DNA of 26,010 nucleotides, from assembly GCA_965644315.1 (NCBI GenBank), contig CBFFRQ010000187.1, positions 1 to 26,010 on the forward strand. The letters run 5' to 3'. Every line of letters begins with the position of its first letter. Position 1 is the first letter of the stretch. Below the pieces are notes generated by a model. That model had not been told where the DNA came from. It saw only the letters and a program-made list of their open reading frames with translations, and ran no database searches. This document shows, one piece after another, positions 1-15,381 of this stretch. This stretch comes from Caecitellus pseudoparvulus (Eukaryota > Protista > Bigyra: Bicosoecida). A program made the translations under genes and the position numbers.

Positions 1-1954
1 TAACCCTAACCCTAACCCTAACCCTAACCCTAACCCTAACCCTAACCCTAACCCTAACCCTAACCCTAACCCTAACCCTAACCCTAACCCTAACCCTAAC
101 CCTAACCCTAACCCTAACCCTAACCCTAACCCTAACCCTAACCCTAACCCTAACCCTAACCCTAACCCTAACCCTAACCCTAACCCTAACCCTAACCCTA
201 ACCCTAACCCTAACCCTAACCCTAACCCTAACCCTAACCCTAACCCTAACCCTAACCCTAACCCTAACCCTAACCCTAACCCTAACCCTAACCCTAACCC
301 TAACCCTAACCCTAACCCTAACCCTAACCCTAACCCTAACCCTAACCCTAACCCTAACCCTAACCCTAACCCTAACCCTAACCCTAACCCTAACCCTAAC
401 CCTAACCCTAACCCTAACCCTAACCCTAACCCTAACCCTAACCCTAACCCTAACCCTAACCCTAACCCTAACCCTAACCCTAACCCTAACCCTAACCCTA
501 ACCCTAACCCTAACCCTAACCCTAACCCTAACCCTAACCCTAACCCTAACCCTAACCCTAACCCTAACCCTAACCCTAACCCTAACCCTAACCCTAACCC
601 TAACCCTAACCCTAACCCTAACCCTAACCCTAACCCTAACCCTAACCCTAACCCTAACCCTAACCCTAACCCTAACCCTAACCCTAACCCTAACCCTAAC
701 CCTAACCCTAACCCTAACCCTAACCCTAACCCTAACCCTAACCCTAACCCTAACCCTAACCCTAACCCTAACCCTAACCCTAACCCTAACCCTAACCCTA
801 ACCCTAACCCTAACCCTAACCCTAACCCTAACCCTAACCCTAACCCTAACCCTAACCCTAACCCTAACCCTAACCCTAACCCTAACCCTAACCCTAACCC
901 TAACCCTAACCCTAACCCTAACCCTAACCCTAACCCTAACCCTAACCCTAACCCTAACCCTAACCCTAACCCTAACCCTAACCCTAACCCTAACCCTAAC
1001 CCTAACCCTAACCCTAACCCTAACCCTAACCCTAACCCTAACCCTAACCCTAACCCTAACCCTAACCCTAACCCTAACCCTAACCCTAACCCTAACCCTA
1101 ACCCTAACCCTAACCCTAACCCTAACCCTAACCCTAACCCTAACCCTAACCCTAACCCTAACCCTAACCCTAACCCTAACCCTAACCCTAACCCTAACCC
1201 TAACCCTAACCCTAACCCTAACCCTAACCCTAACCCTAACCCTAACCCTAACCCTAACCCTAACCCTAACCCTAACCCTAACCCTAACCCTAACCCTAAC
1301 CCTAACCCTAACCCTAACCCTAACCCTAACCCTAACCCTAACCCTAACCCTAACCCTAACCCTAACCCTAACCCTAACCCTAACCCTAACCCTAACCCTA
1401 ACCCTAACCCTAACCCTAACCCTAACCCTAACCCTAACCCTAACCCTAACCCTAACCCTAACCCTAACCCTAACCCTAACCCTAACCCTAACCCTAACCC
1501 TAACCCTAACCCTAACCCTAACCCTAACCCTAACCCTAACCCTAACCCTAACCCTAACCCTAACCCTAACCCTAACCCTAACCCTAACCCTAACCCTAAC
1601 CCTAACCCTAACCCTAACCCTAACCCTAACCCTAACCCTAACCCTAACCCTAACCCTAACCCTAACCCTAACCCTAACCCTAACCCTAACCCTAACCCTA
1701 ACCCTAACCCTAACCCTAACCCTAACCCTAACCCTAACCCTAACCCTAACCCTAACCCTAACCCTAACCCTAACCCTAACCCTAACCCTAACCCTAACCC
1801 TAACCCTAACCCTAACCCTAACCCTAACCCTAACCCTAACCCTAACCCTAACCCTAACCCTAACCCTAACCCTAACCCTAACCCTAACCCTAACCCTAAC
1901 CCTACCCTAACCCTAACCCTAACCCTAACCCTAACCCTAACCCTAACCCTAACC
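1..1954 (+). repeat. Terminal telomeric tract (TAACCC)n (C-rich strand of TTAGGG telomere)
   Basis: Hexamer array from base 1, with one variant unit (TACCC) near 1903; the C-rich strand at the 5' start indicates a left chromosome end. Confidence 0.99.
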
Positions 1955-1987
1955 GGCATGGAGGCAATCTGCAATGCATTGAGTAGC
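1955..1987 (+). mobile_element. 33-nt stub of element A 3' terminus embedded in the telomere
   Basis: 1956-1987 (GCATGGAGGCAATCTGCAATGCATTGAGTAGC) is identical to 5706-5737 and 8686-8717; flanked by telomeric repeats on both sides. Confidence 0.93.
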
Positions 1988-2785
1988 TAACCTAACCCTA
2001 ACCCTAACCCTAACCCTAACCCTAACCCTAACCCTAACCCTAACCCTAACCCTAACCCTAACCCTAACCCTAACCCTAACCCTAACCCTAACCCTAACCC
2101 TAACCCTAACCCTAACCCTAACCCTAACCCTAACCCTAACCCTAACCCTAACCCTAACCCTAACCCTAACCCTAACCCTAACCCTAACCCTAACCCTAAC
2201 CCTAACCCTAACCCTAACCCTAACCCTAACCCTAACCCTAACCCTAACCCTAACCCTAACCCTAACCCTAACCCTAACCCTAACCCTAACCCTAACCCTA
2301 ACCCTAACCCTAACCCTAACCCTAACCCTAACCCTAACCCTAACCCTAACCCTAACCCTAACCCTAACCCTAACCCTAACCCTAACCCTAACCCTAACCC
2401 TAACCCTAACCCTAACCCTAACCCTAACCCTAACCCTAACCCTAACCCTAACCCTAACCCTAACCCTAACCCTAACCCTAACCCTAACCCTAACCCTAAC
2501 CCTAACCCTAACCCTAACCCTAACCCTAACCCTAACCCTAACCCTAACCCTAACCCTAACCCTAACCCTAACCCTAACCCTAACCCTAACCCTAACCCTA
2601 ACCCTAACCCTAACCCTAACCCTAACCCTAACCCTAACCCTAACCCTAACCCTAACCCTAACCCTAACCCCTAACCCAAACCCCTAACCCTAACCCTAAC
2701 CCTAACCCTAACAGAAAGGAGGGAACCCTAACCCTAACCCTAACCCTAACCCTAACCCTAACCCTAACCCTAACCCTAACCCTAA
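1988..2785 (+). repeat. Internal telomeric tract (TAACCC)n with degenerate units near 2670-2725
   Basis: Direct reading; includes TAACCCC and AAACCCC variants and an 11-nt AGAAAGGAGGG interruption at 2713-2723. Confidence 0.97.
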
Positions 2786-2810
2786 GGCAATCTGCAATGC
2801 ATTGAGTAGC
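2786..2810 (+). mobile_element. 25-nt stub of element A 3' terminus joined via TAAC to the 5' end of copy A1
   Basis: GGCAATCTGCAATGCATTGAGTAGC is identical to 5713-5737. Confidence 0.92.
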
Positions 2811-2814
2811 TAAC

Positions 2815-5737
2815 TTTCCAAATGTCAAGCTAATCACAAGTTGTGAAGTGCTAACATTGCCTAATCCAGGCGCTCGTGCACCCAAGTGTGGTGTTGCACA
2901 GTGCTTGCTGGTTGGGTGGTGCGCACCGGGGCGGGGTAGTGCGAATTCCGCACACCATCGCACCGTGGCTCCCAGTTTGCGCCCTCGGTCGGGGCATGCA
3001 CCTGGGATCGACATCAAAAGCATCATTGACAAGCATCATGAACGCCCAAGTGGATCAAGTCCTGGGGGTCCTCTTCGTGGAGGGGTGCCTGAAGCGCAAG
3101 CAAGTGCTCGGCCCCAGAACAGGTGTCTTCACTGACATGCCACGTCGGGGTGCCGCACGCACCTTCGAGCTTGGAGGACCCCTGCCCAAGACTGATCATG
3201 ATAGTTCATCTTCGGCACGGGACATGTGGCTCGAGGTCTATGGGGAAGCCGCCGAACGGCTGATCCCAGGGCTGAGTGCGGAATTCGGCAACGCCAATGC
3301 GGCCCTGCGCCAGGGACCCACCGGATCGCCAACCATCCTCGTCACGCTCGGAAGTGAGGGTGATTCACCAACAGTGGCACGTCAACTTCGCATTCTTGCT
3401 GCTCAAGAGGACGACTTCGCCATTCGAGTCGGCCAAGGTGGGTTCGTCGCCGTGGCCTACACCAACACCAAGCAGTTCGCATCGGCGAAGGCGAAAGTGA
3501 AGGTGAAGGCCCACCCCACCGCCATCCAAGTGGCCCACCAAGTGACCAAGGAAGCAACCGAAATCGCCTGCCAGTCAGGTGATGTTGCCAAGGTCATGTG
3601 CCTCGTTAGGTCCCACTTCGACCATGGCCCCGTGCCAGCCCAAGCCGTCCGTCCCAGTGTCAGACAATCCGTCCCCTCCGAGGGTGATGCACCTGTCGAC
3701 ACCAAGACACCATCGACCTGGACTGACACTCAGCTCGACAAGGCACCGAAGAAGAAGAAGACCCGTCGAGGCAAGCGAGGAAAGGGCAAGTCAGCCGGAC
3801 GATCCCTCACCTTCGAGGACGTCTTCATCAAGAACGTCCGGCCACCTGCACCTCGACCAACCTCACCACCTGCCACCCAAGGCTCACCCAAAGATACCGT
3901 CACCACCCCTGTGGTGCATGCCATGTTGCCTTCATCAAGGGTGCAGCGGGGCGTCGACCGCAAGTGGCCGTCCCCCACCCCGTCGGGCGAGGCAAGCCCC
4001 GAGGTGCACCGGTATCGGCCGTCTGCAGCAGCAGCATGGGAGGTGATCACAAGGGTGGTGCCTCTTCATGACAGTGTGCGGACACCCGAGCACCTGGCCG
4101 AGTACCCCATCAAGCCTGGCCCTCTGGCCGACCTGCTGTCATCGACCCACGTGTACTCTAACGTGGGGGGCGGGCCTGTGTCCAGGCCTGTCTCGAGACG
4201 GCAGCAGGGGAGAGGGTCTTCGAGGCTGGGGACCTCCTCCTACTCCAGCATGCAGCCACCATCAACGCTGCCCAGCTTGCCTTCAAGCACATGGTCAGGC
4301 AGCTGGAGGGGGTGGTCAGTGACTCGTCCAGCTCGGACATCATGGACGTCGGCCAGAAGCCACCCTCCCCCTTCCGCTCAGACGGGCAACGGGTGGCCGT
4401 CTTCCGCAACATGCTGCACCAGCACTCGCCGGATGACACCTTCCTGGCCCCAGGTACACCACCAGTCCTGCTTCCCGGCCTGCACCTGCTCATCGACCGC
4501 ATCAACCAAGGGTACCGTGCCCCAGCCGGGCATGATGACCTTGGCCAGGCCGGCGTCGACCCCAGCCAGGTTGATGAAGAGGGTGACCAAGAGGGGCACC
4601 TCGACGGAGTGCTGTATGCCTTCGCACTTCGAGAGGTGTGGACCGACAACACGGCCCATCTGCAGCTCATCCTCGTCGACCATGATCGAGGCAAGCTGGT
4701 GCTGTGGAACCCCGACATCCCTGACCTCCATGACGAGCTGCCCCTGCACAAGTGCATGACCCGGCTGGCAGCCGAAGGCATCAACGTCTTGTACCGGATC
4801 TGGACCACACCCGAGGCGGGCAGTCCAGCACCCTTCCGGGACAGGCTTCGAGGGGCACTCCAGTCTCTCCGAGATGACTTGCACCCCCTGCCTCACAAGG
4901 CCACCGACGGCACCGTGCACCCCCAGACCCTCATCGCTGGCAAGGGCACAAGGGTGGCCATGCCTCATGGGCGGATGACCCGACAGCAGGCCGCCACCCT
5001 GGAGGCTGAGGTCAAGGACCCCCTCAAGCGGCTGGTGCCTGAAGACGGCGAGGGTCGCCTGCCCAAGGTCAAGGATGTGCCCCACATCTCGATCGGGCAG
5101 ATGGGTGGACGCCTGATGTAAGTCACCTGTGGGGGCATACTCCCTGTGCCACACATGACTGAAGCTTTGTGTCGCGACCGACGCACATAGCTGACATCGG
5201 ACATTGGAAAGTCCAACCCAACCTCACCATCACCAACCCAACATCGATACCAACACATCAGGACTCGGCTCAGTGGAAGGGGAAGGCACTTGCAGCAAGA
5301 TCTGTGAGGCCGCCCCCAAACCTGAGCCGAAGGGACAGCCGGGCTGGGTCGTGTGCTTGCATCTCAGCAACACCCAGTCCGTGTCGAGTCCATATCCTCC
5401 AGCCCACACCGCCACCCAAGCCAAGCAAGTCGGGTCTCCACCCCTGGACATCGGACCGAGACGGACGAGACTGGACTGGACGGACAAGACAAGAGTGGAC
5501 CGAGACCTGGACCTACACCTCAAGACCATCCCACCGGGGCGGGCGCTGAAGCGCCAAGACAGACGGCGACTTATACAACGGACACGAGTCTGTGCTAGTC
5601 GCAAAGCCGTGCAAGCGGTGCCGTCGTGGTGTCTGTGTCACTGCATTCTGTTGTGGCGCAGGTGGCACCACATGTCCAAGCCCAAGCTGTACCATGATGT
5701 AGCCTGCATGGAGGCAATCTGCAATGCATTGAGTAGC
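2815..5737 (+). mobile_element. Telomere-associated element A, copy 1 (2,923 bp; probable non-autonomous retroelement)
   Basis: Near-identical to 5794-8717; bounded by CTAAC/telomeric repeats; single long ORF plus ~620-nt 3' region; 3' stubs occur elsewhere in the telomere. Confidence 0.88.
3038..5121 (+). pseudogene. Element A ORF, copy 1, split by a 1-nt deletion (G6 vs G7 at 4165-4170); may be a sequencing error
   Basis: ORFs 2876..4759 and 4291..5121 together reproduce the intact ORF of copy 2. Confidence 0.75.
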
Positions 5738-5741
5738 TAAC
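5542..5741 (+). other. Structured 3'-terminal RNA module of element A (hairpins followed by GCUAAC)
   Basis: Stems GGCGC/GCGCC, GCGACT/AGTCGC, CGGAC/GTCTG, GCCGT-GCAA-GCGGT and GTGGTGTC/GGCACCAC are matched by equivalent stems in element B at 11012-11207. Confidence 0.75.
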
Positions 5742-5793
5742 CTAACCCTAACCTAACCCTAACCCTAACCCTAACCCTAACCCTAACCCTAAC
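5738..5793 (+). repeat. Telomeric spacer between A1 and A2 (56 bp, includes two TAACC variants)
   Basis: Direct reading. Confidence 0.97.
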
Positions 5794-8717
5794 TTTCCAA
5801 ATGTCAAGCTAATCACAAGTTGTGAAGTGCTAACATTGCCTAATCCAGGCGCTCGTGCACCCAAGTGTGGTGTTGCACAGTGCTTGCTGGTTGGGTGGTG
5901 CGCACCGGGGCGGGGTAGTGCGAATTCCGCACACCATCGCACCGTGGCTCCCAGTTTGCGCCCTCGGTCGGGGCATGCACCTGGGATCGACATCAAAAGC
6001 ATCATTGACAAGCATCATGAACGCCCAAGTGGATCAAGTCCTGGGGGTCCTCTTCGTGGAGGGGTGCCTGAAGCGCAAGCAAGTGCTCGGCCCCAGAACA
6101 GGTGTCTTCACTGACATGCCACGTCGGGGTGCCGCACGCACCTTCGAGCTTGGAGGACCCCTGCCCAAGACTGATCATGATAGTTCATCTTCGGCACGGG
6201 ACATGTGGCTCGAGGTCTATGGGGAAGCCGCCGAACGGCTGATCCCAGGGCTGAGTGCGGAATTCGGCAACGCCAATGCGGCCCTGCGCCAGGGACCCAC
6301 CGGATCGCCAACCATCCTCGTCACGCTCGGAAGTGAGGGTGATTCACCAACAGTGGCACGTCAACTTCGCATTCTTGCTGCTCAAGAGGACGACTTCGCC
6401 ATTCGAGTCGGCCAAGGTGGGTTCGTCGCCGTGGCCTACACCAACACCAAGCAGTTCGCATCGGCGAAGGCGAAAGTGAAGGTGAAGGCCCACCCCACCG
6501 CCATCCAAGTGGCCCACCAAGTGACCAAGGAAGCAACCGAAATCGCCTGCCAGTCAGGTGATGTTGCCAAGGTCATGTGCCTCGTTAGGTCCCACTTCGA
6601 CCATGGCCCCGTGCCAGCCCAAGCCGTCCGTCCCAGTGTCAGACAATCCGTCCCCTCCGAGGGTGATGCACCTGTCGACACCAAGACACCATCGACCTGG
6701 ACTGACACTCAGCTCGACAAGGCACCGAAGAAGAAGAAGACCCGTCGAGGCAAGCGAGGAAAGGGCAAGTCAGCCGGACGATCCCTCACCTTCGAGGACG
6801 TCTTCATCAAGAACGTCCGGCCACCTGCACCTCGACCAACCTCACCACCTGCCACCCAAGGCTCACCCAAAGATACCGTCACCACCCCTGTGGTGCATGC
6901 CATGTTGCCTTCATCAAGGGTGCAGCGGGGCGTCGACCGCAAGTGGCCGTCCCCCACCCCGTCGGGCGAGGCAAGCCCCGAGGTGCACCGGTATCGGCCG
7001 TCTGCAGCAGCAGCATGGGAGGTGATCACAAGGGTGGTGCCTCTTCATGACAGTGTGCGGACACCCGAGCACCTGGCCGAGTACCCCATCAAGCCTGGCC
7101 CTCTGGCCGACCTGCTGTCATCGACCCACGTGTACTCTAACGTGGGGGGGCGGGCCTGTGTCCAGGCCTGTCTCGAGACGGCAGCAGGGGAGAGGGTCTT
7201 CGAGGCTGGGGACCTCCTCCTACTCCAGCATGCAGCCACCATCAACGCTGCCCAGCTTGCCTTCAAGCACATGGTCAGGCAGCTGGAGGGGGTGGTCAGT
7301 GACTCGTCCAGCTCGGACATCATGGACGTCGGCCAGAAGCCACCCTCCCCCTTCCGCTCAGACGGGCAACGGGTGGCCGTCTTCCGCAACATGCTGCACC
7401 AGCACTCGCCGGATGACACCTTCCTGGCCCCAGGTACACCACCAGTCCTGCTTCCCGGCCTGCACCTGCTCATCGACCGCATCAACCAAGGGTACCGTGC
7501 CCCAGCCGGGCATGATGACCTTGGCCAGGCCGGCGTCGACCCCAGCCAGGTTGATGAAGAGGGTGACCAAGAGGGGCACCTCGACGGAGTGCTGTATGCC
7601 TTCGCACTTCGAGAGGTGTGGACCGACAACACGGCCCATCTGCAGCTCATCCTCGTCGACCATGATCGAGGCAAGCTGGTGCTGTGGAACCCCGACATCC
7701 CTGACCTCCATGACGAGCTGCCCCTGCACAAGTGCATGACCCGGCTGGCAGCCGAAGGCATCAACGTCTTGTACCGGATCTGGACCACACCCGAGGCGGG
7801 CAGTCCAGCACCCTTCCGGGACAGGCTTCGAGGGGCACTCCAGTCTCTCCGAGATGACTTCCCCCCCCTGCCTCACAAGGCCACCGACGGCACCGTGCAC
7901 CCCCAGACCCTCATCGCTGGCAAGGGCACAAGGGTGGCCATGCCTCATGGGCGGATGACCCGACAGCAGGCCGCCACCCTGGAGGCTGAGGTCAAGGACC
8001 CCCTCAAGCGGCTGGTGCCTGAAGACGGCGAGGGTCGCCTGCCCAAGGTCAAGGATGTGCCCCACATCTCGATCGGGCAGATGGGTGGACGCCTGATGTA
8101 AGTCACCTGTGGGGGCATACTCCCTGTGCCACACATGACTGAAGCTTTGTGTCGCGACCGACGCACATAGCTGACATCGGACATTGGAAAGTCCAACCCA
8201 ACCTCACCATCACCAACCCAACATCGATACCAACACATCAGGACTCGGCTCAGTGGAAGGGGAAGGCACTTGCAGCAAGATCTGTGAGGCCGCCCCCAAA
8301 CCTGAGCCGAAGGGACAGCCGGGCTGGGTCGTGTGCTTGCATCTCAGCAACACCCAGTCCGTGTCGAGTCCATATCCTCCAGCCCACACCGCCACCCAAG
8401 CCAAGCAAGTCGGGTCTCCACCCCTGGACATCGGACCGAGACGGACGAGACTGGACTGGACGGACAAGACAAGAGTGGACCGAGACCTGGACCTACACCT
8501 CAAGACCATCCCACCGGGGCGGGCGCTGAAGCGCCAAGACAGACGGCGACTTATACAACGGACACGAGTCTGTGCTAGTCGCAAAGCCGTGCAAGCGGTG
8601 CCGTCGTGGTGTCTGTGTCACTGCATTCTGTTGTGGCGCAGGTGGCACCACATGTCCAAGCCCAAGCTGTACCATGATGTAGCCTGCATGGAGGCAATCT
8701 GCAATGCATTGAGTAGC
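5794..8717 (+). mobile_element. Telomere-associated element A, copy 2 (2,924 bp, intact ORF)
   Basis: Same 5' start (CTAAC|TTTCCAAATG) and 3' end (GAGTAGC|TAAC) as copy 1; I noticed only 3 nt of difference. Confidence 0.88.
6017..8101 (+). CDS. Element A protein (~694 aa from ATG 6017; alternative ATG 5975): basic KKKKTRRGKRGKGK segment, Pro/Ser-rich linker, possible papain-fold C-terminal domain; no RT motifs seen
   Basis: Long uninterrupted ORF with GC3-rich codons, TAA stop. Confidence 0.8.
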   Translation: MNAQVDQVLGVLFVEGCLKRKQVLGPRTGVFTDMPRRGAARTFELGGPLPKTDHDSSSSARDMWLEVYGEAAERLIPGLSAEFGNANAALRQGPTGSPTILVTLGSEGDSPTVARQLRILAAQEDDFAIRVGQGGFVAVAYTNTKQFASAKAKVKVKAHPTAIQVAHQVTKEATEIACQSGDVAKVMCLVRSHFDHGPVPAQAVRPSVRQSVPSEGDAPVDTKTPSTWTDTQLDKAPKKKKTRRGKRGKGKSAGRSLTFEDVFIKNVRPPAPRPTSPPATQGSPKDTVTTPVVHAMLPSSRVQRGVDRKWPSPTPSGEASPEVHRYRPSAAAAWEVITRVVPLHDSVRTPEHLAEYPIKPGPLADLLSSTHVYSNVGGRACVQACLETAAGERVFEAGDLLLLQHAATINAAQLAFKHMVRQLEGVVSDSSSSDIMDVGQKPPSPFRSDGQRVAVFRNMLHQHSPDDTFLAPGTPPVLLPGLHLLIDRINQGYRAPAGHDDLGQAGVDPSQVDEEGDQEGHLDGVLYAFALREVWTDNTAHLQLILVDHDRGKLVLWNPDIPDLHDELPLHKCMTRLAAEGINVLYRIWTTPEAGSPAPFRDRLRGALQSLRDDFPPLPHKATDGTVHPQTLIAGKGTRVAMPHGRMTRQQAATLEAEVKDPLKRLVPEDGEGRLPKVKDVPHISIGQMGGRLM

Positions 8718-8721
8718 TAAC
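8522..8721 (+). other. Structured 3'-terminal RNA module of element A, copy 2
   Basis: Identical to 5542-5741. Confidence 0.75.
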
Positions 8722-8756
8722 CCTAACCCTAACCCTAACCCTAACCCTAACCCTAA
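8718..8756 (+). repeat. Telomeric spacer (6.5 units) capping the truncated 5' end of element B
   Basis: Direct reading. Confidence 0.97.
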
Positions 8757-11201
8757 TCGCCTTCAGCAAGGCCCAGCTGGGGATGCAAAGCTCGCTGGCA
8801 CGCATGCACAACTATGCGAAGCTTGCTGTGTGTGGCGTCTTGCCAACACACATCCGGGCGACGAAACTCCGCAGCAACATCTTCATGAAGCTGCTGAAGA
8901 ATGTCCAAGTGCCCACCCCCATGGCCAAGGCGCTGTCCATCAGCCTGCGCCAAGCCCTGGACCTGCTGCCCTCCCCCCTGGACATGGCCGACATCTTCCT
9001 GGCCAATGTCCGCCTCGACAGGCCAGGCGCTGGAGGCATCCCAGATCCATGGGCCTTACACGGTCTACTCGACCTCTGGCTCCTTGGATGCCTCCCTGAC
9101 CGCGCTCGCCTGGAGGCTGTGTGCCTGGAGCCGCCGCCTGACTCGGCCCCAGACACACACGGGGTCGACATCACCGCTGCGATGGACCCCGCACCCCCCA
9201 AGATCCAGCTGCTTGGACTCGCTGCGGCGGAGTCCTCGGATCTGTCTGAGGCCCCCCAGTTCCCGGACACCACCCCCTGGGCCACTCGGCAACGCGTCGT
9301 CGCCTCCTTCCTTCATGTGGCCCAGACGGTCAAGTGCAGTGCAGTTGGCTACACTCCCACGGGGGAGATGAAGGCCACCAGGCGTCCGAAGGAGTACCAC
9401 ATCGGTGTGGGTGCTCGCTTCGTCGCCTGGCTGCACCCGATCCCTTCCTCTGTGAACCCAGTCTTCTGGGTCCACGAAGGCGATCAGGAGAGACGTGTGA
9501 AGGTGCACCTGTGGCAGACGCTTCAAGTGTTCAACGGGGATGACACCCCTACACTGTTCAGCGCCTGCCCCCTGTGCCACAGCGTCTCGTGGTGCAGCCT
9601 GCAGGAGCACGTCCTTCTTGACTGCCCCCACCACGCCCTGGTCCCTGCGAGAAGGTCCGCCCTGTCCGAGGTGCGGACCTTCCTGTCCAGATCCAATGAT
9701 GCAGTGAGGGGGGTTGCCAACTGCCAGTACCTTGAAGTACCCCCCCCACTGCTGGATGCCGTCGTCCACGCCGACGAAGGCCGCTTGTTGGGCCGCCCGT
9801 GTCGCCTGCTGCTGCTGCGACTGCTGCTGTGCGGCCAGTGGCCCCATCGGTGGGGCCAGCCTCCGGCACAGCAGCCTTGGAGTCCCGAGGCAGCCGCGGT
9901 CCTGAGTAACCCCCATGTCACTCTCCGCGGCTCCTCGGGTCCACTCCGCCCCCCCAAGTACTGGCGCGAGGCCCTGGTAGCCGCCACGGGCCTCGCGGTA
10001 TCTGCGTGGGACGCGGTGGTGACGTGCATGCTCAGTCTTACCTCTCGTGCCGACCGTCACATCCAGAGGCACGCCCGGTACCTCTGGTGGGCGGCGCACG
10101 GGCGAACATGTCCTCTCCCAGGTTACTCGGCTCCTGATCCGAGTACTGTGAGGAAGCATGTGCGGGATGTGAAGACGCGGCGCTTCGAGCGCACTTACTT
10201 CCCTGTCAAGTCCCCTCGTCGGCCGCCTCGCTCCTTCACGAGGCAGGCCACCTTGCTCGACTTCGGGCTGGCACGGCCGGAAGTCCACGAGGAACCTCCG
10301 GCACCGTCGATGTCATCCTCGGCGTCGTCCTCCGGGTCGTCCTTGAAGTGCTCGTCAGACTCTGAGTAGCGGGCGATGTGTGTAGAGCGCGGCGCGGGGC
10401 GGTGCAAGCTTACGGCGTGGCGTGGTGACAACCACGGTCGTGGCTGAGCGAAGTGCAGGTGCGCATGAAGGCGATGTCCTTGATGATGGATGGGACCTGT
10501 GGAAAGTTGGAGAATGTGGTGAAGAATATGTCCAGTATACTTACATGATGGCTCGGGGTCCTTGTGCAGCCCGAGATAGATTCCTGTGACGGAGCGCGCG
10601 GAATTTGGCAGGGTGAACACGCGGGCGCGCGGGGAAACGTCGCAGGCGGGGCGCACAGGTCCTCAGGGCCTTGATTGATGAGTAAGCTGGATTATCTGTG
10701 AAGGAAGGCAGGTGTTCGTGGTGTTCTTGGTTCTCGGGTGGCGTTGTTCCGGCGGTGCGCGCTGCTACCACCGGCGTGGTGCAGTGCAGCACCGTCGTGA
10801 AACGCCACCCGAAGGCGGCCACTGCGGCTCAGGACAGCGCGCAGTGGCCCCAGGCACACGTGCAGTGCCTGGCAAGGGCCAGGAGAAGCGGGGGGTCTCT
10901 GAATTATGAAGCGAAGTGTGGACTGGGACGAAGCAGGAGTGGACCCGGCCCCCTCTGGCTCAGCCGACTGAGCCGAGAGGGCGCGGGAGGGGCAGTTCGA
11001 CACGAATGGGCGGGCGCGGGCGCGCCCTAGCAAGCGGCGGCTCATACAACGGACGTATGTCCGTGATGGCTGCAGACCCACGAGAGTGGGAGCCGCTGTA
11101 GCGCTCCTGGTGTGCCTTGTGCACAGCAGCGAGCGCTACATGTGATGCCCAAGCTGTATCGCGTGCAAGCGTGAAGGCGACATGCAATGCATTAAATGAG
11201 C
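8757..11201 (+). mobile_element. Element B: 5'-truncated non-LTR (LINE-like) retrotransposon attached at the chromosome break
   Basis: ORF is open from the telomere junction; LINE ORF2 C-terminal motifs; 3' end is homologous to element A and ends GAGC|TAACCC. Confidence 0.8.
8759..10369 (+). CDS. C-terminal part of a LINE-type ORF2 (post-RT region with CCHC zinc knuckle); 5'-partial
   Basis: No stop between the junction and ATG 8783; GAGGIPDP (~9026-9048) resembles the post-RT GGLG-P motif; CPLC-x10-HVLLDCP at 9566-9628. Confidence 0.75.
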   Translation, partial: AFSKAQLGMQSSLARMHNYAKLAVCGVLPTHIRATKLRSNIFMKLLKNVQVPTPMAKALSISLRQALDLLPSPLDMADIFLANVRLDRPGAGGIPDPWALHGLLDLWLLGCLPDRARLEAVCLEPPPDSAPDTHGVDITAAMDPAPPKIQLLGLAAAESSDLSEAPQFPDTTPWATRQRVVASFLHVAQTVKCSAVGYTPTGEMKATRRPKEYHIGVGARFVAWLHPIPSSVNPVFWVHEGDQERRVKVHLWQTLQVFNGDDTPTLFSACPLCHSVSWCSLQEHVLLDCPHHALVPARRSALSEVRTFLSRSNDAVRGVANCQYLEVPPPLLDAVVHADEGRLLGRPCRLLLLRLLLCGQWPHRWGQPPAQQPWSPEAAAVLSNPHVTLRGSSGPLRPPKYWREALVAATGLAVSAWDAVVTCMLSLTSRADRHIQRHARYLWWAAHGRTCPLPGYSAPDPSTVRKHVRDVKTRRFERTYFPVKSPRRPPRSFTRQATLLDFGLARPEVHEEPPAPSMSSSASSSGSSLKCSSDSE

Positions 11202-11207
11202 TAACCC
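11012..11207 (+). other. Structured 3'-terminal RNA module of element B
   Basis: Stems GGGCGC/GCGCCC, GCGGCT/GGCTGC, CGGAC/GTCCG, CCCAC-GAGA-GTGGG and TGTAGCGCTC/GAGCGCTACA occur in the same order and with similar spacing as in element A. Confidence 0.75.
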
Positions 11208-12398
11208 GTACCCAAGCATGCCATGAGACCCCAGCCCCCAGCACATGACCCCACCGGACGTCAAGAGCGCACAGCTGTGATCATTCCCGACAGTGATGTG
11301 AGATGCTGTTGCGCCCCCAAGGTCAACAGTCCCAGCAGTTGCCGGGTGCTCATCGTTGCCAATGAACTCGGTGTTGCCGTACCCAAGCTGGCCACTGGAC
11401 CCCGACCCCCAGCACATGACCTCTCCGCTCGTGAGAAGCACGCACGTGTGGCTCTGTCCTGCAGCGACTCGTGCTGCCGCGCGCCCCCCGCCCAAATTAA
11501 CTTGACCTGCAGCAGCAGGGTGCTCGTTGTCACCAATGTGGTTGAAGTTGCTGTATCCGAGCCTGCCAGAGAATGCTGTCCCCCAGCACATGACCCCGCC
11601 GTTCGTCAACACAGCACACGTGTGGCTGTCTCCAGCGGAAACCTGTGCTGCAGCAAGACCTGCACCCAGGTTGACAGCACCTGCAGCAGATGGGTGCTCA
11701 TTGTCACCAATGTTGTTGGTGTTACCATACCCAAGCCGGCCGTTTGATCCAAACCCCCAGCACATAAGCAGCCCAGTTGTCAACACTGCGCACGTGTGGC
11801 TCTTGCCTGCAGACACTTGGGCAGCGGCTGCACCAGAGCCCAAATCAACGGTTCCCGCCGCAGCTGGATCCTCAGAGGCGCCAACGTTCTCCTTATTGCC
11901 GTACCCGAGCTGGCCGGCGATGGAGGAGCCCCAGCACATGACACCTCCGTCATCCAGCACAACACAAGTGTGGCTGCCTCCTGCCGAAACTTGGACCACG
12001 ACAACACCAGCGCCTACGTTCACATTGCCTGCAGTTTCTGGTAGCTCGTTGTCTCCGATGGGGTTCAAGTTCCCGTACCCGAGCTGCCCACTGTAGCCTC
12101 CACCCCAGCATCGCACCTTGCCGTCCGTCACGGCGCAGGTATGCAAGCCGCCGGAAGATAGCTGAGTGTCTTCAACAGACGTGCTCGCCAAGCGGCGATG
12201 AAGGTTGACATCATTCAGCATCAAACTGAGTCCACGAAGTGCAACGTGAGCTTCGGCGCAGCCCAACGTTGCCAGGAAGGCAGCGGAGAGCACCGCGAAA
12301 CGCCACCGGCACGCTGCGCCGGCCCCTGCCCGCTTTGGCAAGTGCGCAGCGCAAGACAGACAGGCGCTAGCGCATTGGTTCATAACATGGGGACCCAT
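11136..12398 (-). CDS. Secreted RCC1/BLIP-II-type repeat protein, truncated in repeat 6 and fused to 22 codons of antisense element B (start uncertain: ATG at 12524, 12398 or 12383)
   Basis: 5.5 repeats of QVSAGxSHTCAVLxxGxVMCWGxxxxGxLGYGN; hydrophobic signal-like segment FAVLSAAFLATLGCAEA; repeat pattern stops at ~11205. Confidence 0.88.
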   Translation of the reverse strand: MGPHVMNQCASACLSCAAHLPKRAGAGAACRWRFAVLSAAFLATLGCAEAHVALRGLSLMLNDVNLHRRLASTSVEDTQLSSGGLHTCAVTDGKVRCWGGGYSGQLGYGNLNPIGDNELPETAGNVNVGAGVVVVQVSAGGSHTCVVLDDGGVMCWGSSIAGQLGYGNKENVGASEDPAAAGTVDLGSGAAAAQVSAGKSHTCAVLTTGLLMCWGFGSNGRLGYGNTNNIGDNEHPSAAGAVNLGAGLAAAQVSAGDSHTCAVLTNGGVMCWGTAFSGRLGYSNFNHIGDNEHPAAAGQVNLGGGRAAARVAAGQSHTCVLLTSGEVMCWGSGSSGQLGYGNTEFIGNDEHPATAGTVDLGGATASHITVGNDHSCALLTSGGVMCWGLGSHGMLGYGLAHLMHCMSPSRLHAIQLGHHM

Positions 12399-13371
12399 GG
12401 CAATGCCAGGCGGCAATGAGGGATGCTGCGTGGGACGCAGCGCGTCCTGAAGAATCCGACACTGCACGTCCTGAAAGCGCTGTTGCCTGATTCGCGCCTG
12501 CGAGTGGTACAGGGAAAAGAGCATGATACATGGACCCTAGTAGTGGTAAAAATGAGAATTCATGTGCAACACAGTGCATCGACAGCACTAGACAAGCATT
12601 GTGGCGCGAGCAGCACGCGTTGACAGCATCTGATGGGCGTTTCACGCGCCATCAAGAAGCGGAGGCGACTCCCGGACTCCCAAGCACGAAAGCCCTTTGA
12701 TATACTTACACAGCAGAACATTGGAGCTACGAGATCTGTCTAAGTCAAAAATGGTACATGCTGCAATGTGCCGATTGTGCCCAGTACCAAAATGAAGCGG
12801 CACGGCCCCCCTTGCTTGGCTGTGACGGGCGTCACCACCCCGCTCGGTCTGCAGCGGCAACCTTCCGCACACCGTGATACAATATGGAGCCTTCAATAGC
12901 CCCGCGTGGGCTACAGAGCAGCAGCGGCTGGGGCGACATGCTGGAGGTGCGTCCCAACAGCCGCCCGATGCAGCACCTCAAGGAAGAGACACCGTGCGCC
13001 CCACGCCGTGCTTCCCCCTCCATCATCATCCCGGGGCCAAAGAGTCCTTCCATTTGGACTACACTTCATAGCTGCCTCTAAAGCTGTCAAGGCCTGGACA
13101 TCGAAGGGCCCAGCTACCTCTCAATAGGCGCTGTAGCAGCCGCTGCATCCACACCCAGTTCAAGGCTGGCAGCATGGTACTCCCGGAATCTCCAGACCTC
13201 AAAACGTGCCACAGGAGCCTCTGTCAGTCTCGCAAGCTCTGCAGCTTGCTGTCTTCAACTGATGATCACGTTCAGCTGCATCATCTGGTCAAAGCCTACA
13301 ACTACTCTTCACAATGCCTCAGCCACCCAGAACTGAACTCTGCGGCCAGGACCGACGACCACATGTAAACA

Positions 13372-14871
13372 TCACCGCCCGCAAGCTGCCCTGAGGAGTA
13401 GAAAATGGCGCCTCCCACTTCTCGTGCTTGTTCCGTACCATGCAGCGTCCTTCCCTGCCTGCAGGGCAGTGTCCCCCGCCAACGCTGCAGCTTCGCGTGG
13501 CATGGCCCGGCTGCCTGTGAGCCCCATCAACTCTCGCATCACGTGCGAGTGGCCATTCCTGCACGCCATGCGGAAGCCCACGTCAGGGCCGTCCCAGCTT
13601 CCCACGTGGACATCCACAGCTTTTTGTCCCGTGAGGGCCAACAGCTCGCGCACCACGTGCACGTGGCCACGCTCACAAGCACTCCGAAAACCAACCTCTG
13701 GCCCAGTCCCATCTGCAACGTGAACATCAATCGCCCCGTCGCCAACCACGCCAAGTAACTCGCGCAGCACGGCCAAGTGGCCAAGGTAGCAAGCCCATCG
13801 GAAGCCATACTCGGGCCCAACTCTGTCTCCCGCGTGGATATCCACCGCATGCTCCGCTGGCAACGCCAACAGCAAACGCACAACGTTTGCGTGGCCATAC
13901 CGGCAAGCGAGCCGAAAGGCAGATTCGGGCCCATCAGCATCCCCTGCATGTACATCCACGGCCAGCTCGCCAGAAAGGGCGAGCAAGTCTCGCACTACTG
14001 TCTCATGTCCTCCTGCACATGCAGATCGAAAGCCAGCTTCAGCCCCTTCCTCGTCACATGCGTGCACGTCTACCTGCCGATCACCAGTGAGAGCCAGCAG
14101 CTCCCGAACTACAGCTTCATGGCCGTGCTGACATGCCCTCCGAAAGCCAGCCTCAGGTCCCTCCCAATCTCCAGCGTGTACGTCCACAACGCGATGGCCT
14201 GTCAGCGCCAGGAGCTCGCGCACCACACCAACATGGCCCCGTGCGCACGCGTACCGAAAGGGGGCCTCAGGCCCATCTTCATCTCCCACATGCACATCAA
14301 TTTCCCGGTCCCCACCAAGCCGCAGCAACACATGCACAACATCCAAGTGGCCGTGCAAGCACGCGGCTCGGAAGGCAGCCTCCGGCCCAGCCGAGTCCCC
14401 AGCGCGCACGTCCACTGCACGCTCGCTGCCGAGACGCAGCAGCTCGCAAACAACATCTAGGTGGCCTTCCGAACTGGCCGCCCGGAAGGCAAACTCAGGC
14501 CCGTCTTCATCCCCAGCGTGCACGTCCACGGTCCTTTCCCCGCTCAGCGCAAGCAGCTCCCGCACCGTCTCCACATGCCCATTCCAGCAAGCCAATCGAA
14601 AACCCGCCTCAGGGCCATTCTCATCACCTGCATGGACATCCAGGCCTGCCTCTTCCTCCACGGCCAGCAGTGCTCGCAACAGGCCAACGTGCCCTGCTCC
14701 ACATGCTCTCAAAAAGCCAGCAGTAATGTCGTCCCCTGTCAGAGCCCCAAGCACAGACTCTGCTCTCGCCTTTGACCCGTGGAGCATGTCCATCAGTGTG
14801 ATTACGTCACCACCTGTGCAGGCAGCCCTCCACTCTCCCACGGCACCGGCATCGTCCGCCTCACTCGCCAT
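13372..14871 (-). CDS. Ankyrin-repeat protein (~10 long repeats of ~39 aa)
   Basis: Repeats of VDVHAGDxxGPExxFRxACxxGHxxVVRELLAL; ATG 14871 (MASEADD); TGA stop. Confidence 0.92.
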   Translation of the reverse strand: MASEADDAGAVGEWRAACTGGDVITLMDMLHGSKARAESVLGALTGDDITAGFLRACGAGHVGLLRALLAVEEEAGLDVHAGDENGPEAGFRLACWNGHVETVRELLALSGERTVDVHAGDEDGPEFAFRAASSEGHLDVVCELLRLGSERAVDVRAGDSAGPEAAFRAACLHGHLDVVHVLLRLGGDREIDVHVGDEDGPEAPFRYACARGHVGVVRELLALTGHRVVDVHAGDWEGPEAGFRRACQHGHEAVVRELLALTGDRQVDVHACDEEGAEAGFRSACAGGHETVVRDLLALSGELAVDVHAGDADGPESAFRLACRYGHANVVRLLLALPAEHAVDIHAGDRVGPEYGFRWACYLGHLAVLRELLGVVGDGAIDVHVADGTGPEVGFRSACERGHVHVVRELLALTGQKAVDVHVGSWDGPDVGFRMACRNGHSHVMRELMGLTGSRAMPREAAALAGDTALQAGKDAAWYGTSTRSGRRHFLLLRAACGR

Positions 14872-15381
14872 GGCGTTGCGGCGCAGATTCCGCACATGTG
14901 GCCTCGATGCACCTCCGCGCTGTGGAAGGAACAAGGCTCCAGCAGGCCGATCAGGGTGAAATTCTAAGTTGCACTTTCACACTCCAGTTGTGAACATGAA
15001 CGGCACCTGGGCTTCCGCGTTTTCGTTACGCACTGTAACTGCTCCAAGTGTCAGCCGAGGCAGTGGCGTCAGCTGCCCCTCGTGCCTATCGCCTCGTGCT
15101 GCCTCCAAAGCTCCTTCGAGCTGGACCGTTCACTCTCTTTTCAAATCAAACACCTTCATGGTCCTCTAGAGATCGCTCCACTTCCTAGTCTTTGCCGAGA
15201 TCAGTTGCACGTCGCAAGACTATCTGTGCAAGTTTCCGTTCGGCATCGGCAGTGCTCCAAGGAGCAAAGATGTAATCACAGCTTGTCGACCTCACGTGAA
15301 TGGAAATGTGCCTGCCACCAAGCCAGGCAAACTAGTGTGTGCATTTTGCAGCCCATGTCACCCTCTCTTTCCTTTCCTTTA

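What the first reader, a model, noticed from the sequence alone, without database searches (positions are those of the whole stretch)
1955..11207. Two-component telomere-extending retroelement system (A and B) interleaved with TTAGGG repeats
Seen: five same-orientation insertions (two A stubs, two full A copies, one truncated B), each with its 5' end toward the tip and its 3' end in AGC-TAAC(CC). They are separated by telomeric repeats, with no poly(A), LTRs or recognisable target duplications. Established: this polarity is what results when an RNA is reverse transcribed using the chromosome's G-rich 3' end as primer, as for Drosophila HeT-A/TART/TAHRE and endonuclease-less Penelope-like Athena/Coprina elements. 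Inference: B is the RT-encoding LINE-like driver, and A is either a protein-coding non-autonomous partner or one half of a segmented element with ORF1 and ORF2 on separate RNAs. A HeT-A/TART-like pair with a LINE-type protein, a telomere-complementary tail and coexisting canonical repeats in a protist is not a system I recognise.
Basis: partly seen in the sequence, partly recalled or inferred. Interest (0 to 1): 0.95.

Follow-up and report, generated by a model that had tools for sequence, protein, structure and literature searches.

The report
Telomere-specific LINEs with ORF1-only partner
This chromosome end carries head-to-tail copies of a telomere-only jumping gene (a LINE encoding an endonuclease and a reverse transcriptase) and of its shorter, protein-coding hitch-hiker, interleaved with ordinary TTAGGG repeats. 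It resembles the fruit-fly telomere elements, but in a microbe that still has telomerase.

Summary
Behind about 1.95 kb of terminal (CCCTAA)n lie two A stubs, two full A copies (2.93 kb) and a 2.45-kb 3' fragment of B. All are in one orientation and all end in GCTAAC.

- **B** is a 7.76-kb non-LTR retrotransposon. One reading frame (up to 2,386 codons open) runs from an ORF1-like region through an AP-type endonuclease, a reverse transcriptase and a CCHC motif.
- **A** is an old non-autonomous relative that keeps only the ORF1-like part. Its 694-aa protein is 39-47% identical to the pre-endonuclease part of B-type ORFs, and dN/dS is 0.17 against an environmental copy. It shares B's 5' end and a roughly 190-nt structured 3' module (15 compensatory pairs).
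- **Genome-wide**, 102 3' ends, 70 5' ends and at least 8 RT lineages all sit at contig ends in the telomere-dictated orientation. An intact TERT gene is present.
- **Junctions** favour priming on very short or broken ends. In 28 of 42 junctions 12 nt or less of repeat follows the element. B abuts a truncated RCC1 gene whose 98%-identical paralogs run about 270 codons further.

The elements are not endonuclease-less, A is not half of a split element, and the general kind is known (MoTeR1/2, TRAS/SART, HeT-A/TAHRE). I rate it a new variant of a known kind. First-stage notes flagged the same system on other pieces of this genome.

The parts
1..1954 (+). Terminal telomere tract, (CCCTAA)n on the + strand. 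The window starts at base 1 of contig C187.
1955..1991 (+). A stub 1: the last 36-37 nt of element A, ending in GCTAAC.
1992..2785 (+). Internal telomere tract with variant units near 2664-2690 and a 12-nt non-telomeric filler at 2713-2724.
2786..2814 (+). A stub 2: the last 29 nt of A, joined to the next A copy with no repeat between them.
2815..5741 (+). A copy 1, full length (2,927 nt). A G6 homopolymer where copy 2 has G7 splits the ORF.
5742..5793 (+). 52-nt telomeric tract between the two A copies.
5794..8721 (+). A copy 2, full length (2,928 nt): 5' UTR 5794-6016, ORF 6017-8101, 3' UTR 8102-8721.
6017..8101 (+). A ORF, 694 aa from the first ATG. It is the ORF1-like protein, homologous to the pre-endonuclease part of B-type ORFs and under purifying selection.
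8527..8721 (+). Structured 3' module of A (the same module lies at 5547-5741 in copy 1), ending in the single-stranded tail ...GCAATGCATTGAGTAGCTAAC.
8722..8756 (+). 35-nt telomeric tract between A copy 2 and B.
8757..11205 (+). B, a 5'-truncated 3' fragment (2,449 nt of about 7,760). The frame is open from 8759 to the stop at 10369 (post-RT region with a CCHC motif). The 3' UTR is 10370-11205, and its structured module is at about 11011-11205.
11206..12524 (-). Subtelomeric RCC1-repeat gene cut at its 3' end by the B junction. The frame runs on into B and stops at 11136.

Best explanation
The array is built by a guild of telomere-specialised non-LTR retrotransposons.

B-type elements are autonomous. 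They are about 7.8 kb long with one giant ORF: an ORF1-like region of about 750 aa, an AP-type endonuclease, a reverse transcriptase, a CCHC motif and a C-terminal region.

A is an old ORF1-only relative, standing to B as HeT-A stands to TAHRE. It keeps the shared 5' end, a selected ORF1-like protein and the shared structured 3' module of about 190 nt. Inferred: a B-type RT copies it in trans by recognising that module.

The RNAs have no poly(A). They end in one or two telomeric C-strand units (...GCUAAC[C][CUAACC]). Inferred: this tail pairs with a G-strand 3' end (...TTAGG-3'), and the RT extends that end. This places the element 3' end towards the centromere and the 5' end towards the tip.

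I think the 3'-OH is most often a chromosome end that has lost most or all of its repeats, including broken ends inside genes. That is an end-healing mode, with the endonuclease possibly supplying nicks in longer tracts. Telomerase, whose gene is intact, then re-caps the new end. Template jumps or repeated additions give the repeat-free A-A junctions. Recombination between ends spreads the arrays further.

Shown: element anatomy, the A/B homology, conservation of the 3' structure, the exclusive end location and polarity, TERT presence, and the truncated gene at the inner junction. Inferred: trans-mobilisation, tail pairing, and end-priming versus nick-priming.
For: Domains:
- RVT_1 scores 8.6e-32 in L005 and 3.2e-30 in L016.
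- In the whole genome, Exo_endo_phos lies about 1.8 kb upstream of RVT_1 in the same open frame, up to 2,386 codons on C34 and 2,313 on C105.
- A metagenome relative, P0009/L035, is 80% identical to B over the RT N-terminal stretch they share. It is one open frame from ORF1-like tail to endonuclease to RT.
- The endonuclease motifs SWN, TEPGG, MGDLN-H, LDHIL and SDH are conserved across sequences only 32-61% identical.
- The AlphaFold model (pLDDT 65, pTM 0.73) matches APE1, ExoIII and the L1 endonuclease at E 1e-10 to 1e-8.

A as an ORF1-only relative:
- tblastn of the A ORF hits the 5' parts of B, B2 and E-family copies at 39-44% identity. The alignment is colinear, and A stops exactly where the E family continues into the endonuclease.
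- The first 360 nt of A are 74% identical to B's 5' end, and the last 205 nt are 70% identical to B2's 3' end.
- dN/dS is 0.165 against the metagenome copy.

3' module: there are 44 pairs, 15 with compensatory changes. 97% of cells are paired against 28-52% when partners are slid, and 0 of 500 shuffles reach the observed value.

Location:
- 102 3' ends and 70 5' ends, every forward hit within 30 kb of a contig start.
- At least 47 full A copies that are about 100% identical.
- All RT hits above 90 bits lie at contig ends.
- 5' truncation points are scattered while 3' ends are intact.

End-healing:
- 28 of 42 junctions have 12 nt or less of repeat after the 3' end.
- B joins the RCC1 gene with only CC between them.
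- 97-98% identical paralogs have 732-codon open frames against 466 here.

TERT: Telomerase_RBD scores 79 bits in a 1,389-codon open frame.
Against: - A conserved, apparently functional AP-endonuclease would not be needed if ends were the only primers. It fits nick-dependent insertion into repeats, as in TRAS/SART. From my own knowledge, Drosophila TART and TAHRE also keep an endonuclease domain, so this does not settle the question.
- Some insertions sit distal to long tracts (721, 418, 301 and 122 nt), so short telomeres are not a requirement.
- Interstitial tracts may have shrunk after insertion.
Transcription, RNA ends and current activity are therefore untested.
They are represented by Pfam coordinates and by relatives: L035, which is 80% identical to B in the RT stretch, plus more distant ones.
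- Contig lengths were not available, so the end position of minus-strand copies is inferred, not shown.
- The near-identity of A copies could partly reflect gene conversion or break-induced replication (BIR), not recent transposition. The B-B junction is identical on C18 and C30.
Confidence: 0.6

Rival explanations
1. The elements are the same, but integration is purely endonuclease-driven (the TRAS/SART or MoTeR mode). The AP-endonuclease nicks the G-strand inside double-stranded telomeric repeats and target-primed reverse transcription follows. The elements are parasites of the repeat tract and do not extend or heal chromosome ends.
For: - The endonuclease domain lies in frame in many diverged lineages, with catalytic motifs conserved.
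- The 3' junction has a fixed register with the repeat.
- Insertions sit distal to long tracts of 122-721 nt.
- The same array architecture with short interstitial (TTAGGG)1-10 tracts is reported for MoTeRs (PMC7367193).
- SART1 inserts at a defined repeat of a three-repeat target (PMC7265360).
Against: - Random nicking in tracts of a kilobase or more should usually leave long proximal remainders. Instead 28 of 42 remainders are 12 nt or less, and most innermost junctions to unique DNA have 1-11 nt.
- B is joined to a truncated gene with at most 2 nt that could be telomeric, and the distal part of that gene is gone. This model would need telomere healing at the break and then an insertion at the very first repeat.
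Confidence: 0.3
2. The elements are now inactive relics. The arrays and the near-identical A copies were spread and homogenised by recombination between chromosome ends (BIR, unequal exchange, D-loop or rolling-circle amplification), not by ongoing retrotransposition.
For: - About 47 A copies are 100% identical.
- Identical B-B junctions occur on C18 and C30 with the same 7,753-nt spacing.
- Identical odd filler junctions occur on C190/C196 and on C32/C151.
- Such processes are documented for MoTeR arrays (PMC7367193).
Against: - A has many different 5' truncation points: 236, 1018, 1175, 2416, 2711, 2749 and 2816, plus the 29- and 37-nt stubs.
- Inter-element tracts vary.
- At least 12 autonomous copies have open frames longer than 2,000 codons.
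- dN/dS is 0.165 for the A ORF.
- At least 8 RT lineages are kept only at ends.
Confidence: 0.08
3. The array is an assembly artefact: repetitive reads mis-joined at a contig end.
For: - The region is highly repetitive, and the two A copies differ only at homopolymer-type positions.
Against: - The same architecture appears at dozens of contig ends, each with different truncation points and tracts.
- An independent short-read metagenome contig has repeats, full A, repeats, then a B-like 5' end.
Confidence: 0.02

Closest known systems
Drosophila HeT-A / TAHRE / TART (Jockey-clade telomeric retrotransposons)
   Same: Head-to-tail arrays at chromosome ends with the 3' end towards the centromere. 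An abundant gag/ORF1-only element (HeT-A) shares its UTRs and gag with an autonomous relative (TAHRE). Broken ends inside genes are healed by direct attachment. The pol genes keep an AP-endonuclease domain (own knowledge; PMC5537684, PMC6581046).
   Different: Here telomerase is present and canonical repeats cap and interleave the elements. The 3' end is a telomeric C-strand unit, not oligo(A). ORF1, endonuclease and RT are fused in one ORF. The RT clade is unresolved and the host is a protist-like microbe.
Magnaporthe oryzae MoTeR1 / MoTeR2 and Fusarium FoTeRs
   Same: The host is telomerase-positive with TTAGGG telomeres. Elements always have the 5' end nearest the tip. An autonomous element and a shorter partner share 5' and 3' ends. 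Interstitial telomere tracts are short, copies are truncated, and arrays are reshaped by breaks and BIR (PMC7367193, PMC12857005).
   Different: PMC10088271 places the MoTeR elements in the CRE clade. From my own knowledge, CRE-clade elements carry a restriction-enzyme-like endonuclease after the RT, and MoTeRs have variant 5' repeats. B has an AP-endonuclease before the RT and no Pfam match after it. A encodes a homolog of the driver's own N-terminal region.
Bombyx TRAS / SART (R1 clade) and Anolis Tx1-1_ACar
   Same: These are AP-endonuclease LINEs that insert specifically into telomeric repeats in a fixed orientation in hosts that have telomerase (PMC10088271, PMC7265360, PMC2868851).
   Different: Those have two ORFs and a poly(A) tail, and no ORF1-only partner is described. 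SART1 needs at least 3 repeats, whereas most junctions here keep 2 repeats or fewer. The B-type endonuclease has no detectable sequence match to the solved TRAS1, R1 or L1 endonucleases.
Endonuclease-deficient Penelope-like elements (Athena, Coprina)
   Same: They are restricted to chromosome ends, and the 3' end carries telomere-complementary sequence thought to pair with the G-overhang (PMC8557442; own knowledge).
   Different: Those lack any endonuclease and have a PLE/TERT-like RT. B has an AP-endonuclease and a LINE-type RT whose best solved matches are L1 ORF2p and R2.
Mammalian HAL1 (half-L1) elements
   Same: A non-autonomous LINE derivative that keeps only ORF1 and is mobilised by the full element (own knowledge).
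   Different: HAL1 is dispersed, polyadenylated and not telomeric.

Membership tests
Non-LTR (LINE) retrotransposon, AP-endonuclease type | Reverse transcriptase domain of the LINE type | tested here: met
   RVT_1 scores 8.6e-32 and 3.2e-30 in longer B and B2 copies. The best solved matches are L1 ORF2p and R2. The window's own B fragment starts after the RT.
Non-LTR (LINE) retrotransposon, AP-endonuclease type | AP-type endonuclease N-terminal to the RT in the same ORF | tested here: met
   PF03372 lies upstream of RVT_1 in open frames up to 2,386 codons. L035 is a single frame. Motifs are conserved. The fold matches APE1, ExoIII and the L1 endonuclease. B's own endonuclease letters were not read.
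Non-LTR (LINE) retrotransposon, AP-endonuclease type | Variable 5' truncation with intact 3' ends, and no LTRs | tested here: met
Non-LTR (LINE) retrotransposon, AP-endonuclease type | Assignment to a named LINE clade by RT phylogeny | not tested
   No labelled reference set was available. The nearest outside relatives are unnamed proteins at 35% identity or less.
TRAS/SART-type telomeric-repeat-specific LINE | Insertion in telomeric repeats in a fixed orientation | tested here: met
TRAS/SART-type telomeric-repeat-specific LINE | Two ORFs, zinc-knuckle ORF1 and a poly(A) tail | tested here: not met
   There is a single fused ORF. No Pfam family hits the ORF1-like protein. The 3' end is GCTAAC with no A run.
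TRAS/SART-type telomeric-repeat-specific LINE | Endonuclease that cleaves telomeric duplex at a defined site | not testable with these tools
   This needs a biochemical assay.
HeT-A/TART/TAHRE-type telomere-forming retrotransposons | Head-to-tail terminal arrays with the 3' end proximal, including attachment to broken ends | tested here: met
HeT-A/TART/TAHRE-type telomere-forming retrotransposons | A gag-only partner related to an autonomous element | tested here: met
HeT-A/TART/TAHRE-type telomere-forming retrotransposons | The host lacks telomerase and the elements replace the repeats | tested here: not met
   A TERT-like 1,389-codon open frame carries Telomerase_RBD at 79 bits. About 1.95 kb of terminal repeats are present.
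MoTeR/FoTeR (CRE-clade telomeric retrotransposons) | Restriction-enzyme-like endonuclease C-terminal to the RT | tested here: not met
   No Pfam match in the 536-aa post-RT region. An AP-endonuclease lies before the RT instead.
MoTeR/FoTeR (CRE-clade telomeric retrotransposons) | Autonomous and non-autonomous pair sharing termini, 5' end towards the tip, short interstitial TTAGGG tracts | tested here: met
   compared with PMC7367193
Endonuclease-deficient Penelope-like elements | No endonuclease domain | tested here: not met

The most novel reading that the evidence does not exclude
A convergent, HeT-A/TAHRE-like chromosome-end-healing system that works alongside telomerase. Retroelement RNAs with a telomeric tail would be reverse transcribed directly onto deprotected or broken ends, including ends inside genes. 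An ORF1-only element would be the main building block. This would be a living intermediate between telomerase-only and retrotransposon-only telomeres.
Probability: 0.4. Interest if true: 0.85.

Novelty: new variant of a known kind. Interest (0 to 1): 0.65.

Why it matters
Telomere-specialised retrotransposons are few and well studied. How the Drosophila system arose from a telomerase-based one is an open question.

This genome has many diverged AP-endonuclease LINE lineages confined to chromosome ends. It also has an ORF1-only partner under selection, a conserved structured 3' RNA module ending in a telomeric unit, an intact telomerase gene, and junctions that look like healed terminal deletions.

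If the host can be cultured, the genome is small and the elements look active, with near-identical copies and long open frames. End-priming versus nick-priming, trans-mobilisation and interplay with telomerase would then be directly testable.

The 3' module and the endonuclease could also be of interest as parts for site-specific insertion tools.

Tried and rejected
- **Read and RNA evidence.** Expression and long-read support are untested.
- **Genome letters.** I did not try fetch from genomes. The middle 2.3 kb of B, including its own endonuclease, was therefore never read, and contig lengths stayed unknown.
- **A ORF function.** None of these gave a usable lead:
  - Pfam gave nothing.
  - The ESM Atlas gave only noise at 0.76.
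  - A PDB profile search hit only a low-complexity match.
  - The AlphaFold model was unusable (pLDDT 34.5). An RRM-like beta-alpha-beta pattern at about 98-151 is only a hint.
  - There was no significant similarity to the N-termini of the distant relatives P0011 and P0013.
- **Rfam.** No family matched in 2786-26010.
- **RT clade.** The names of the nearest database proteins are uninformative. PDB matches do not separate L1 from R2, so the clade stays unresolved.
- **Solved LINE endonucleases.** No sequence-level match to any of them. Only the fold search links the domain to the APE family.
- **Host organism.** It could not be identified. The window's host genes are RCC1, ankyrin and orphan ORFs. 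A 35%-identical relative comes from a coral metagenome, and the best named RT hit is from Haematococcus.
- **Second truncated RCC1 copy.** A pattern search for its junction on C43 found nothing.
- **Rejected readings.** LTR element (no LTRs). Penelope-like element (endonuclease present, LINE-type RT). Split ORF1/ORF2 element (B has its own ORF1-like region).
- **Query hygiene.** I kept plain telomeric repeats out of all search queries.


Full report
**What is in the window**

The window is the first 26,010 bases of contig C187 of a 30.6-Mb, 215-contig genome. It opens with (TAACCC)n, so this is a left chromosome end with the C-strand on top.

The repeat tract is interrupted by two short pieces identical to the 3' end of element A: 1955/6-1991 and 2786-2814. 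Then come, in order:
- A copy 1 at 2815-5741, joined to stub 2 with no repeat between them.
- 52 nt of repeats.
- A copy 2 at 5794-8721.
- 35 nt of repeats.
- A 2,449-nt piece of element B at 8757-11205.

Every piece ends in GCAATGCATT, then 5-6 nt, then GCTAAC, followed by C or CC. There are no LTRs, no inverted repeats and no poly(A). The two A copies differ at three homopolymer-type positions. The G7 version gives the long ORF.

**What B is**

The window's fragment holds only the post-RT part of the ORF (536 codons with a CCHC-like motif, no Pfam hit) and an 836-nt 3' UTR.

The genome holds about 15 copies at 94-97% identity, a second family at about 75% identity (B2) and further families. 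Tandem copies 7,753 nt apart on C18 and C30 give a full length of about 7.76 kb.

Longer copies carry RVT_1 at 8.6e-32 and 3.2e-30. Whole-genome Pfam scans place an Exo_endo_phos domain about 1.8 kb upstream of the RT in the same open frame. That frame is up to 2,386 codons on C34, and at least 12 copies from several lineages exceed 2,000 codons.

The metagenome contig L035 stands in for it:
- Its protein, P0009, is 80% identical to B over the RT N-terminal stretch they share.
- It is one continuous frame from the ORF1-like tail through the endonuclease to the RT.
- The motifs SWN, TEPGG, MGDLN-H, LDHIL and SDH are conserved among four sequences only 32-61% identical.
- An AlphaFold model (pLDDT 65, pTM 0.73) matches APE1, ExoIII, NExo and the L1 endonuclease at E 1e-10 to 1e-8.

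B is therefore an AP-endonuclease LINE, not an endonuclease-less element.

**What A is**

A is 2,928 nt long. It has a 223-nt 5' UTR, a 694-codon ORF from the first ATG (6017-8101) and a 620-nt 3' UTR.

- The ORF has no Pfam, Atlas or PDB relatives.
- It is 39-44% identical by tblastn (45-47% in the protein alignment) to the region of B, B2 and E-family ORFs that precedes the endonuclease, and colinear with it.
- A's stop falls where the E family reads on into the endonuclease.
- The first 360 nt of A are 74% identical to B's 5' end (84% to another B-like 5' end). The last 205 nt are 70% identical to B2's 3' end.

A is thus not a recent deletion of any present driver. It is an independent ORF1-only lineage.

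Against a 97%-identical copy on a metagenome contig (ENA ERZ1643211, L031), the ORF gives dN/dS of 0.165. The 5' UTR shows 1 change in 223 nt. The protein and the 5' end are therefore under constraint. Because B carries its own ORF1-like region, the 'split element' idea is not needed.

**Shared 3' module**

I aligned the last roughly 195 nt of A, the metagenome A, B, B', two B2 variants and two C-family variants. They fold into a common multi-helix structure:
- There are 44 pairs, and 15 show compensatory changes.
- 97% of cells are paired, against 28-52% when partners are slid by 1-3 columns.
- 0 of 500 shuffles reach the observed covariation.

The tail, TGCAATGCATT...GCTAAC, is unpaired and nearly invariant. 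No Rfam family matches. This is the likely handle by which a B-type RT recognises both its own RNA and A's RNA (inference).

**Genome-wide distribution**

- The 3'-end motif occurs 102 times (84 forward, 18 reverse; reversed control 0). Every forward hit lies within 30 kb of a contig start.
- The 5'-end motif occurs 70 times (57 forward, all within about 12 kb of a start).
- At least 47 full A copies are about 100% identical. Further copies are truncated at positions 236, 1018, 1175, 2416, 2711, 2749 and 2816.
- All RT hits above 90 bits lie at contig ends in the same orientation. By profile coordinates and scores they represent at least 8 lineages.
- A weaker (35-bit) RT family is dispersed internally and is something else.

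Contig lengths were not available. The end position of minus-strand copies is therefore inferred, apart from C105, whose end at 19,154 is visible from locus L025.

A TERT-like gene is present: Telomerase_RBD scores 79 bits in a 1,389-codon open frame on C77.

**Junctions and mechanism**

*3' side.* The element always ends in GCTAAC, in register with the following repeat. At the B/RCC1 junction there is no repeat at all, so CUAAC must come from the RNA.

*5' side.* Full-length copies start at TTTCCAAATG and are always preceded by ...AC. Of 23 junctions with 30 nt or less between a 3' end and the next 5' start:
- 10 have no gap (GCTAAC|TTTCC).
- 7 have one, two or four regular CCTAAC units.
- 6 have variant or filler sequence, such as CCCTAAAC, CCCAAAAAC or CGGCAAGGAC.

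*Proximal tracts.* In 42 non-redundant junctions from the fetched loci, the repeat tract proximal to a 3' end is 12 nt or less in 28, 13-60 nt in 10, and over 100 nt in 4. Most innermost junctions to unique DNA have 1-11 nt.

*The RCC1 gene.* In the window B is joined, with only CC between, to an RCC1-repeat gene whose domain match stops at the junction. Paralogs 97-98% identical on C28, C107 and C114 have open frames of 732 codons against 466 here. On C114 the intact gene lies upstream of the innermost element 3' end. The window's end has therefore lost at least 1.2 kb relative to that arrangement before B was attached.

*Reading.* Random endonuclease nicking inside kilobase-long tracts would seldom leave such short remainders. 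Priming on ends with few or no repeats explains them, and also explains the truncated gene.

The conserved endonuclease argues that nicking matters at least sometimes. Insertions distal to tracts of 122-721 nt show that short telomeres are not required. I therefore favour a mixed model dominated by end-priming (about 0.6) over pure nick-driven insertion (about 0.3).

Repeat-free tandems fit template jumping from the 5' end of one RNA to the 3' end of another, helped by the shared AC/CUAAC. Identical B-B junctions on C18 and C30, and identical odd fillers on other contig pairs, show that recombination between ends also copies arrays.

**Relatives elsewhere**

An exhaustive HMMER search found close relatives only as metagenome fragments: P0009 at 80%, P0015 at 67%, P0010 at 53% and P0012 at 49%. 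It also found two long single-ORF endonuclease-plus-RT proteins at 32-35% identity. P0011 is 2,150 aa and comes from a coral metagenome. P0013 is 3,724 aa, on a Logan contig that starts with CCCTAA repeats. Named hits (arthropods, fish, green algae) are at 31% identity or less. The LINE clade is unresolved and the host organism was not identified.

**Comparison with what is known**

A 2023 survey lists the telomere-inserting retrotransposons known then: SART/TRAS, GilM/GilT, Zepp, MoTeR1, Tx1-1_ACar, Athena and the Drosophila HTT elements (PMC10088271).

MoTeR1/MoTeR2 already show the same polarity, an autonomous element with a shorter partner sharing its termini, interstitial (TTAGGG)1-10 tracts and a telomerase-positive host (PMC7367193). 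FoTeRs extend this to Fusarium (PMC12857005). SART1 needs at least three repeats (PMC7265360).

What is different here:
- An AP-endonuclease LINE with ORF1, endonuclease and RT fused in one ORF.
- A 3' end made of a telomeric unit behind a conserved structured module, instead of poly(A).
- A partner that is an ORF1-only homolog under selection, the HeT-A/TAHRE relationship.
- Many coexisting lineages confined to chromosome ends.
- Junction evidence for healing of terminal deletions.

I rate this a new variant of a known kind, with interest 0.65.

First-stage notes flagged the same system on other pieces of this genome (s1-661109, s1-641839, s1-652519, s1-652520, s1-661111). None had been followed up.

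**Limits**

- No read or RNA data were available.
- No more genome letters could be read.
- The structure prediction of the A protein failed.
- No plain telomeric repeats were sent to any search tool.

Noticed in passing
window 11206-12524 (-): The first host gene is an RCC1-repeat protein from a subtelomeric family. Copies 96-98% identical sit near other contig ends (C138, C28, C107, C114, C43, C163). Several are cut at different points: residue 369 on C43 and 350 on C163. This may be a series of terminal deletions.
   Followed up: partly
window 2713-2724: A 12-nt non-telomeric filler (AGAAAGGAGGGA) lies inside the repeat tract, with variant repeat units at about 2664-2690 and about 1903. Its origin is unknown.
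   Followed up: no
window 4165 vs 7145 (A copies 1 and 2): The A copies differ by a G6/G7 homopolymer difference that frameshifts the ORF. About 17 genomic A copies carry a 1-nt-shorter form of unmapped position (2,910 nt aligned), possibly this one. It is either a real frameshifted variant amplified in trans or a recurrent homopolymer assembly error.
   Followed up: partly
G000:C77:24520-26142 (-): A telomerase reverse transcriptase candidate: Telomerase_RBD at 79 bits plus a weak RVT_1 hit, in one 1,389-codon open frame.
   Followed up: partly
G000, e.g. C56:518528, C57:728128, C67:862376, C80:486684, C142 (several): A separate RT family (RVT_1 about 35 bits, frames of 436-739 codons) is dispersed at internal sites in both orientations. 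It is a different, non-telomeric retroelement.
   Followed up: no
L007 about 3940 and L004 about 3942 (C18 and C30): Both contigs have the same B-B junction (..GAACTAA|TGTCAACC.., with the downstream copy lacking its first 9 nt) and the same 7,753-nt spacing. The two chromosome ends therefore share a duplicated A-B-B block.
   Followed up: partly
L002 3946-3990 (C99): After a B 3' end comes CTAAA and then G-strand-oriented GGGTTAGGG and unique sequence. This may be an inverted telomeric junction or the scar of a fusion.
   Followed up: no
L033 1-18758 (Logan SRR24000141): A contig from another GC-rich organism starts with CCCTAA repeats. At 7.5 kb from that end it carries a 3,724-codon endonuclease-plus-RT ORF, 32% identical to B and in the same orientation, next to a DDE_1-like gene.
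   Followed up: no
window 8699-8721 and 11182-11205: The unpaired 3' tail holds the invariant palindrome AATGCATT just before GCTAAC, in all families. It may be a protein-binding or RNA-dimerisation site.
   Followed up: no
window 13372-14934 (-), 15382-17979 (-), 22278-25025 (-): The other subtelomeric genes are all on the minus strand: an ankyrin-repeat protein, an 865-aa cysteine-rich protein with weak NCD3G and ephrin-receptor-like hits, and a 915-aa orphan.
   Followed up: no
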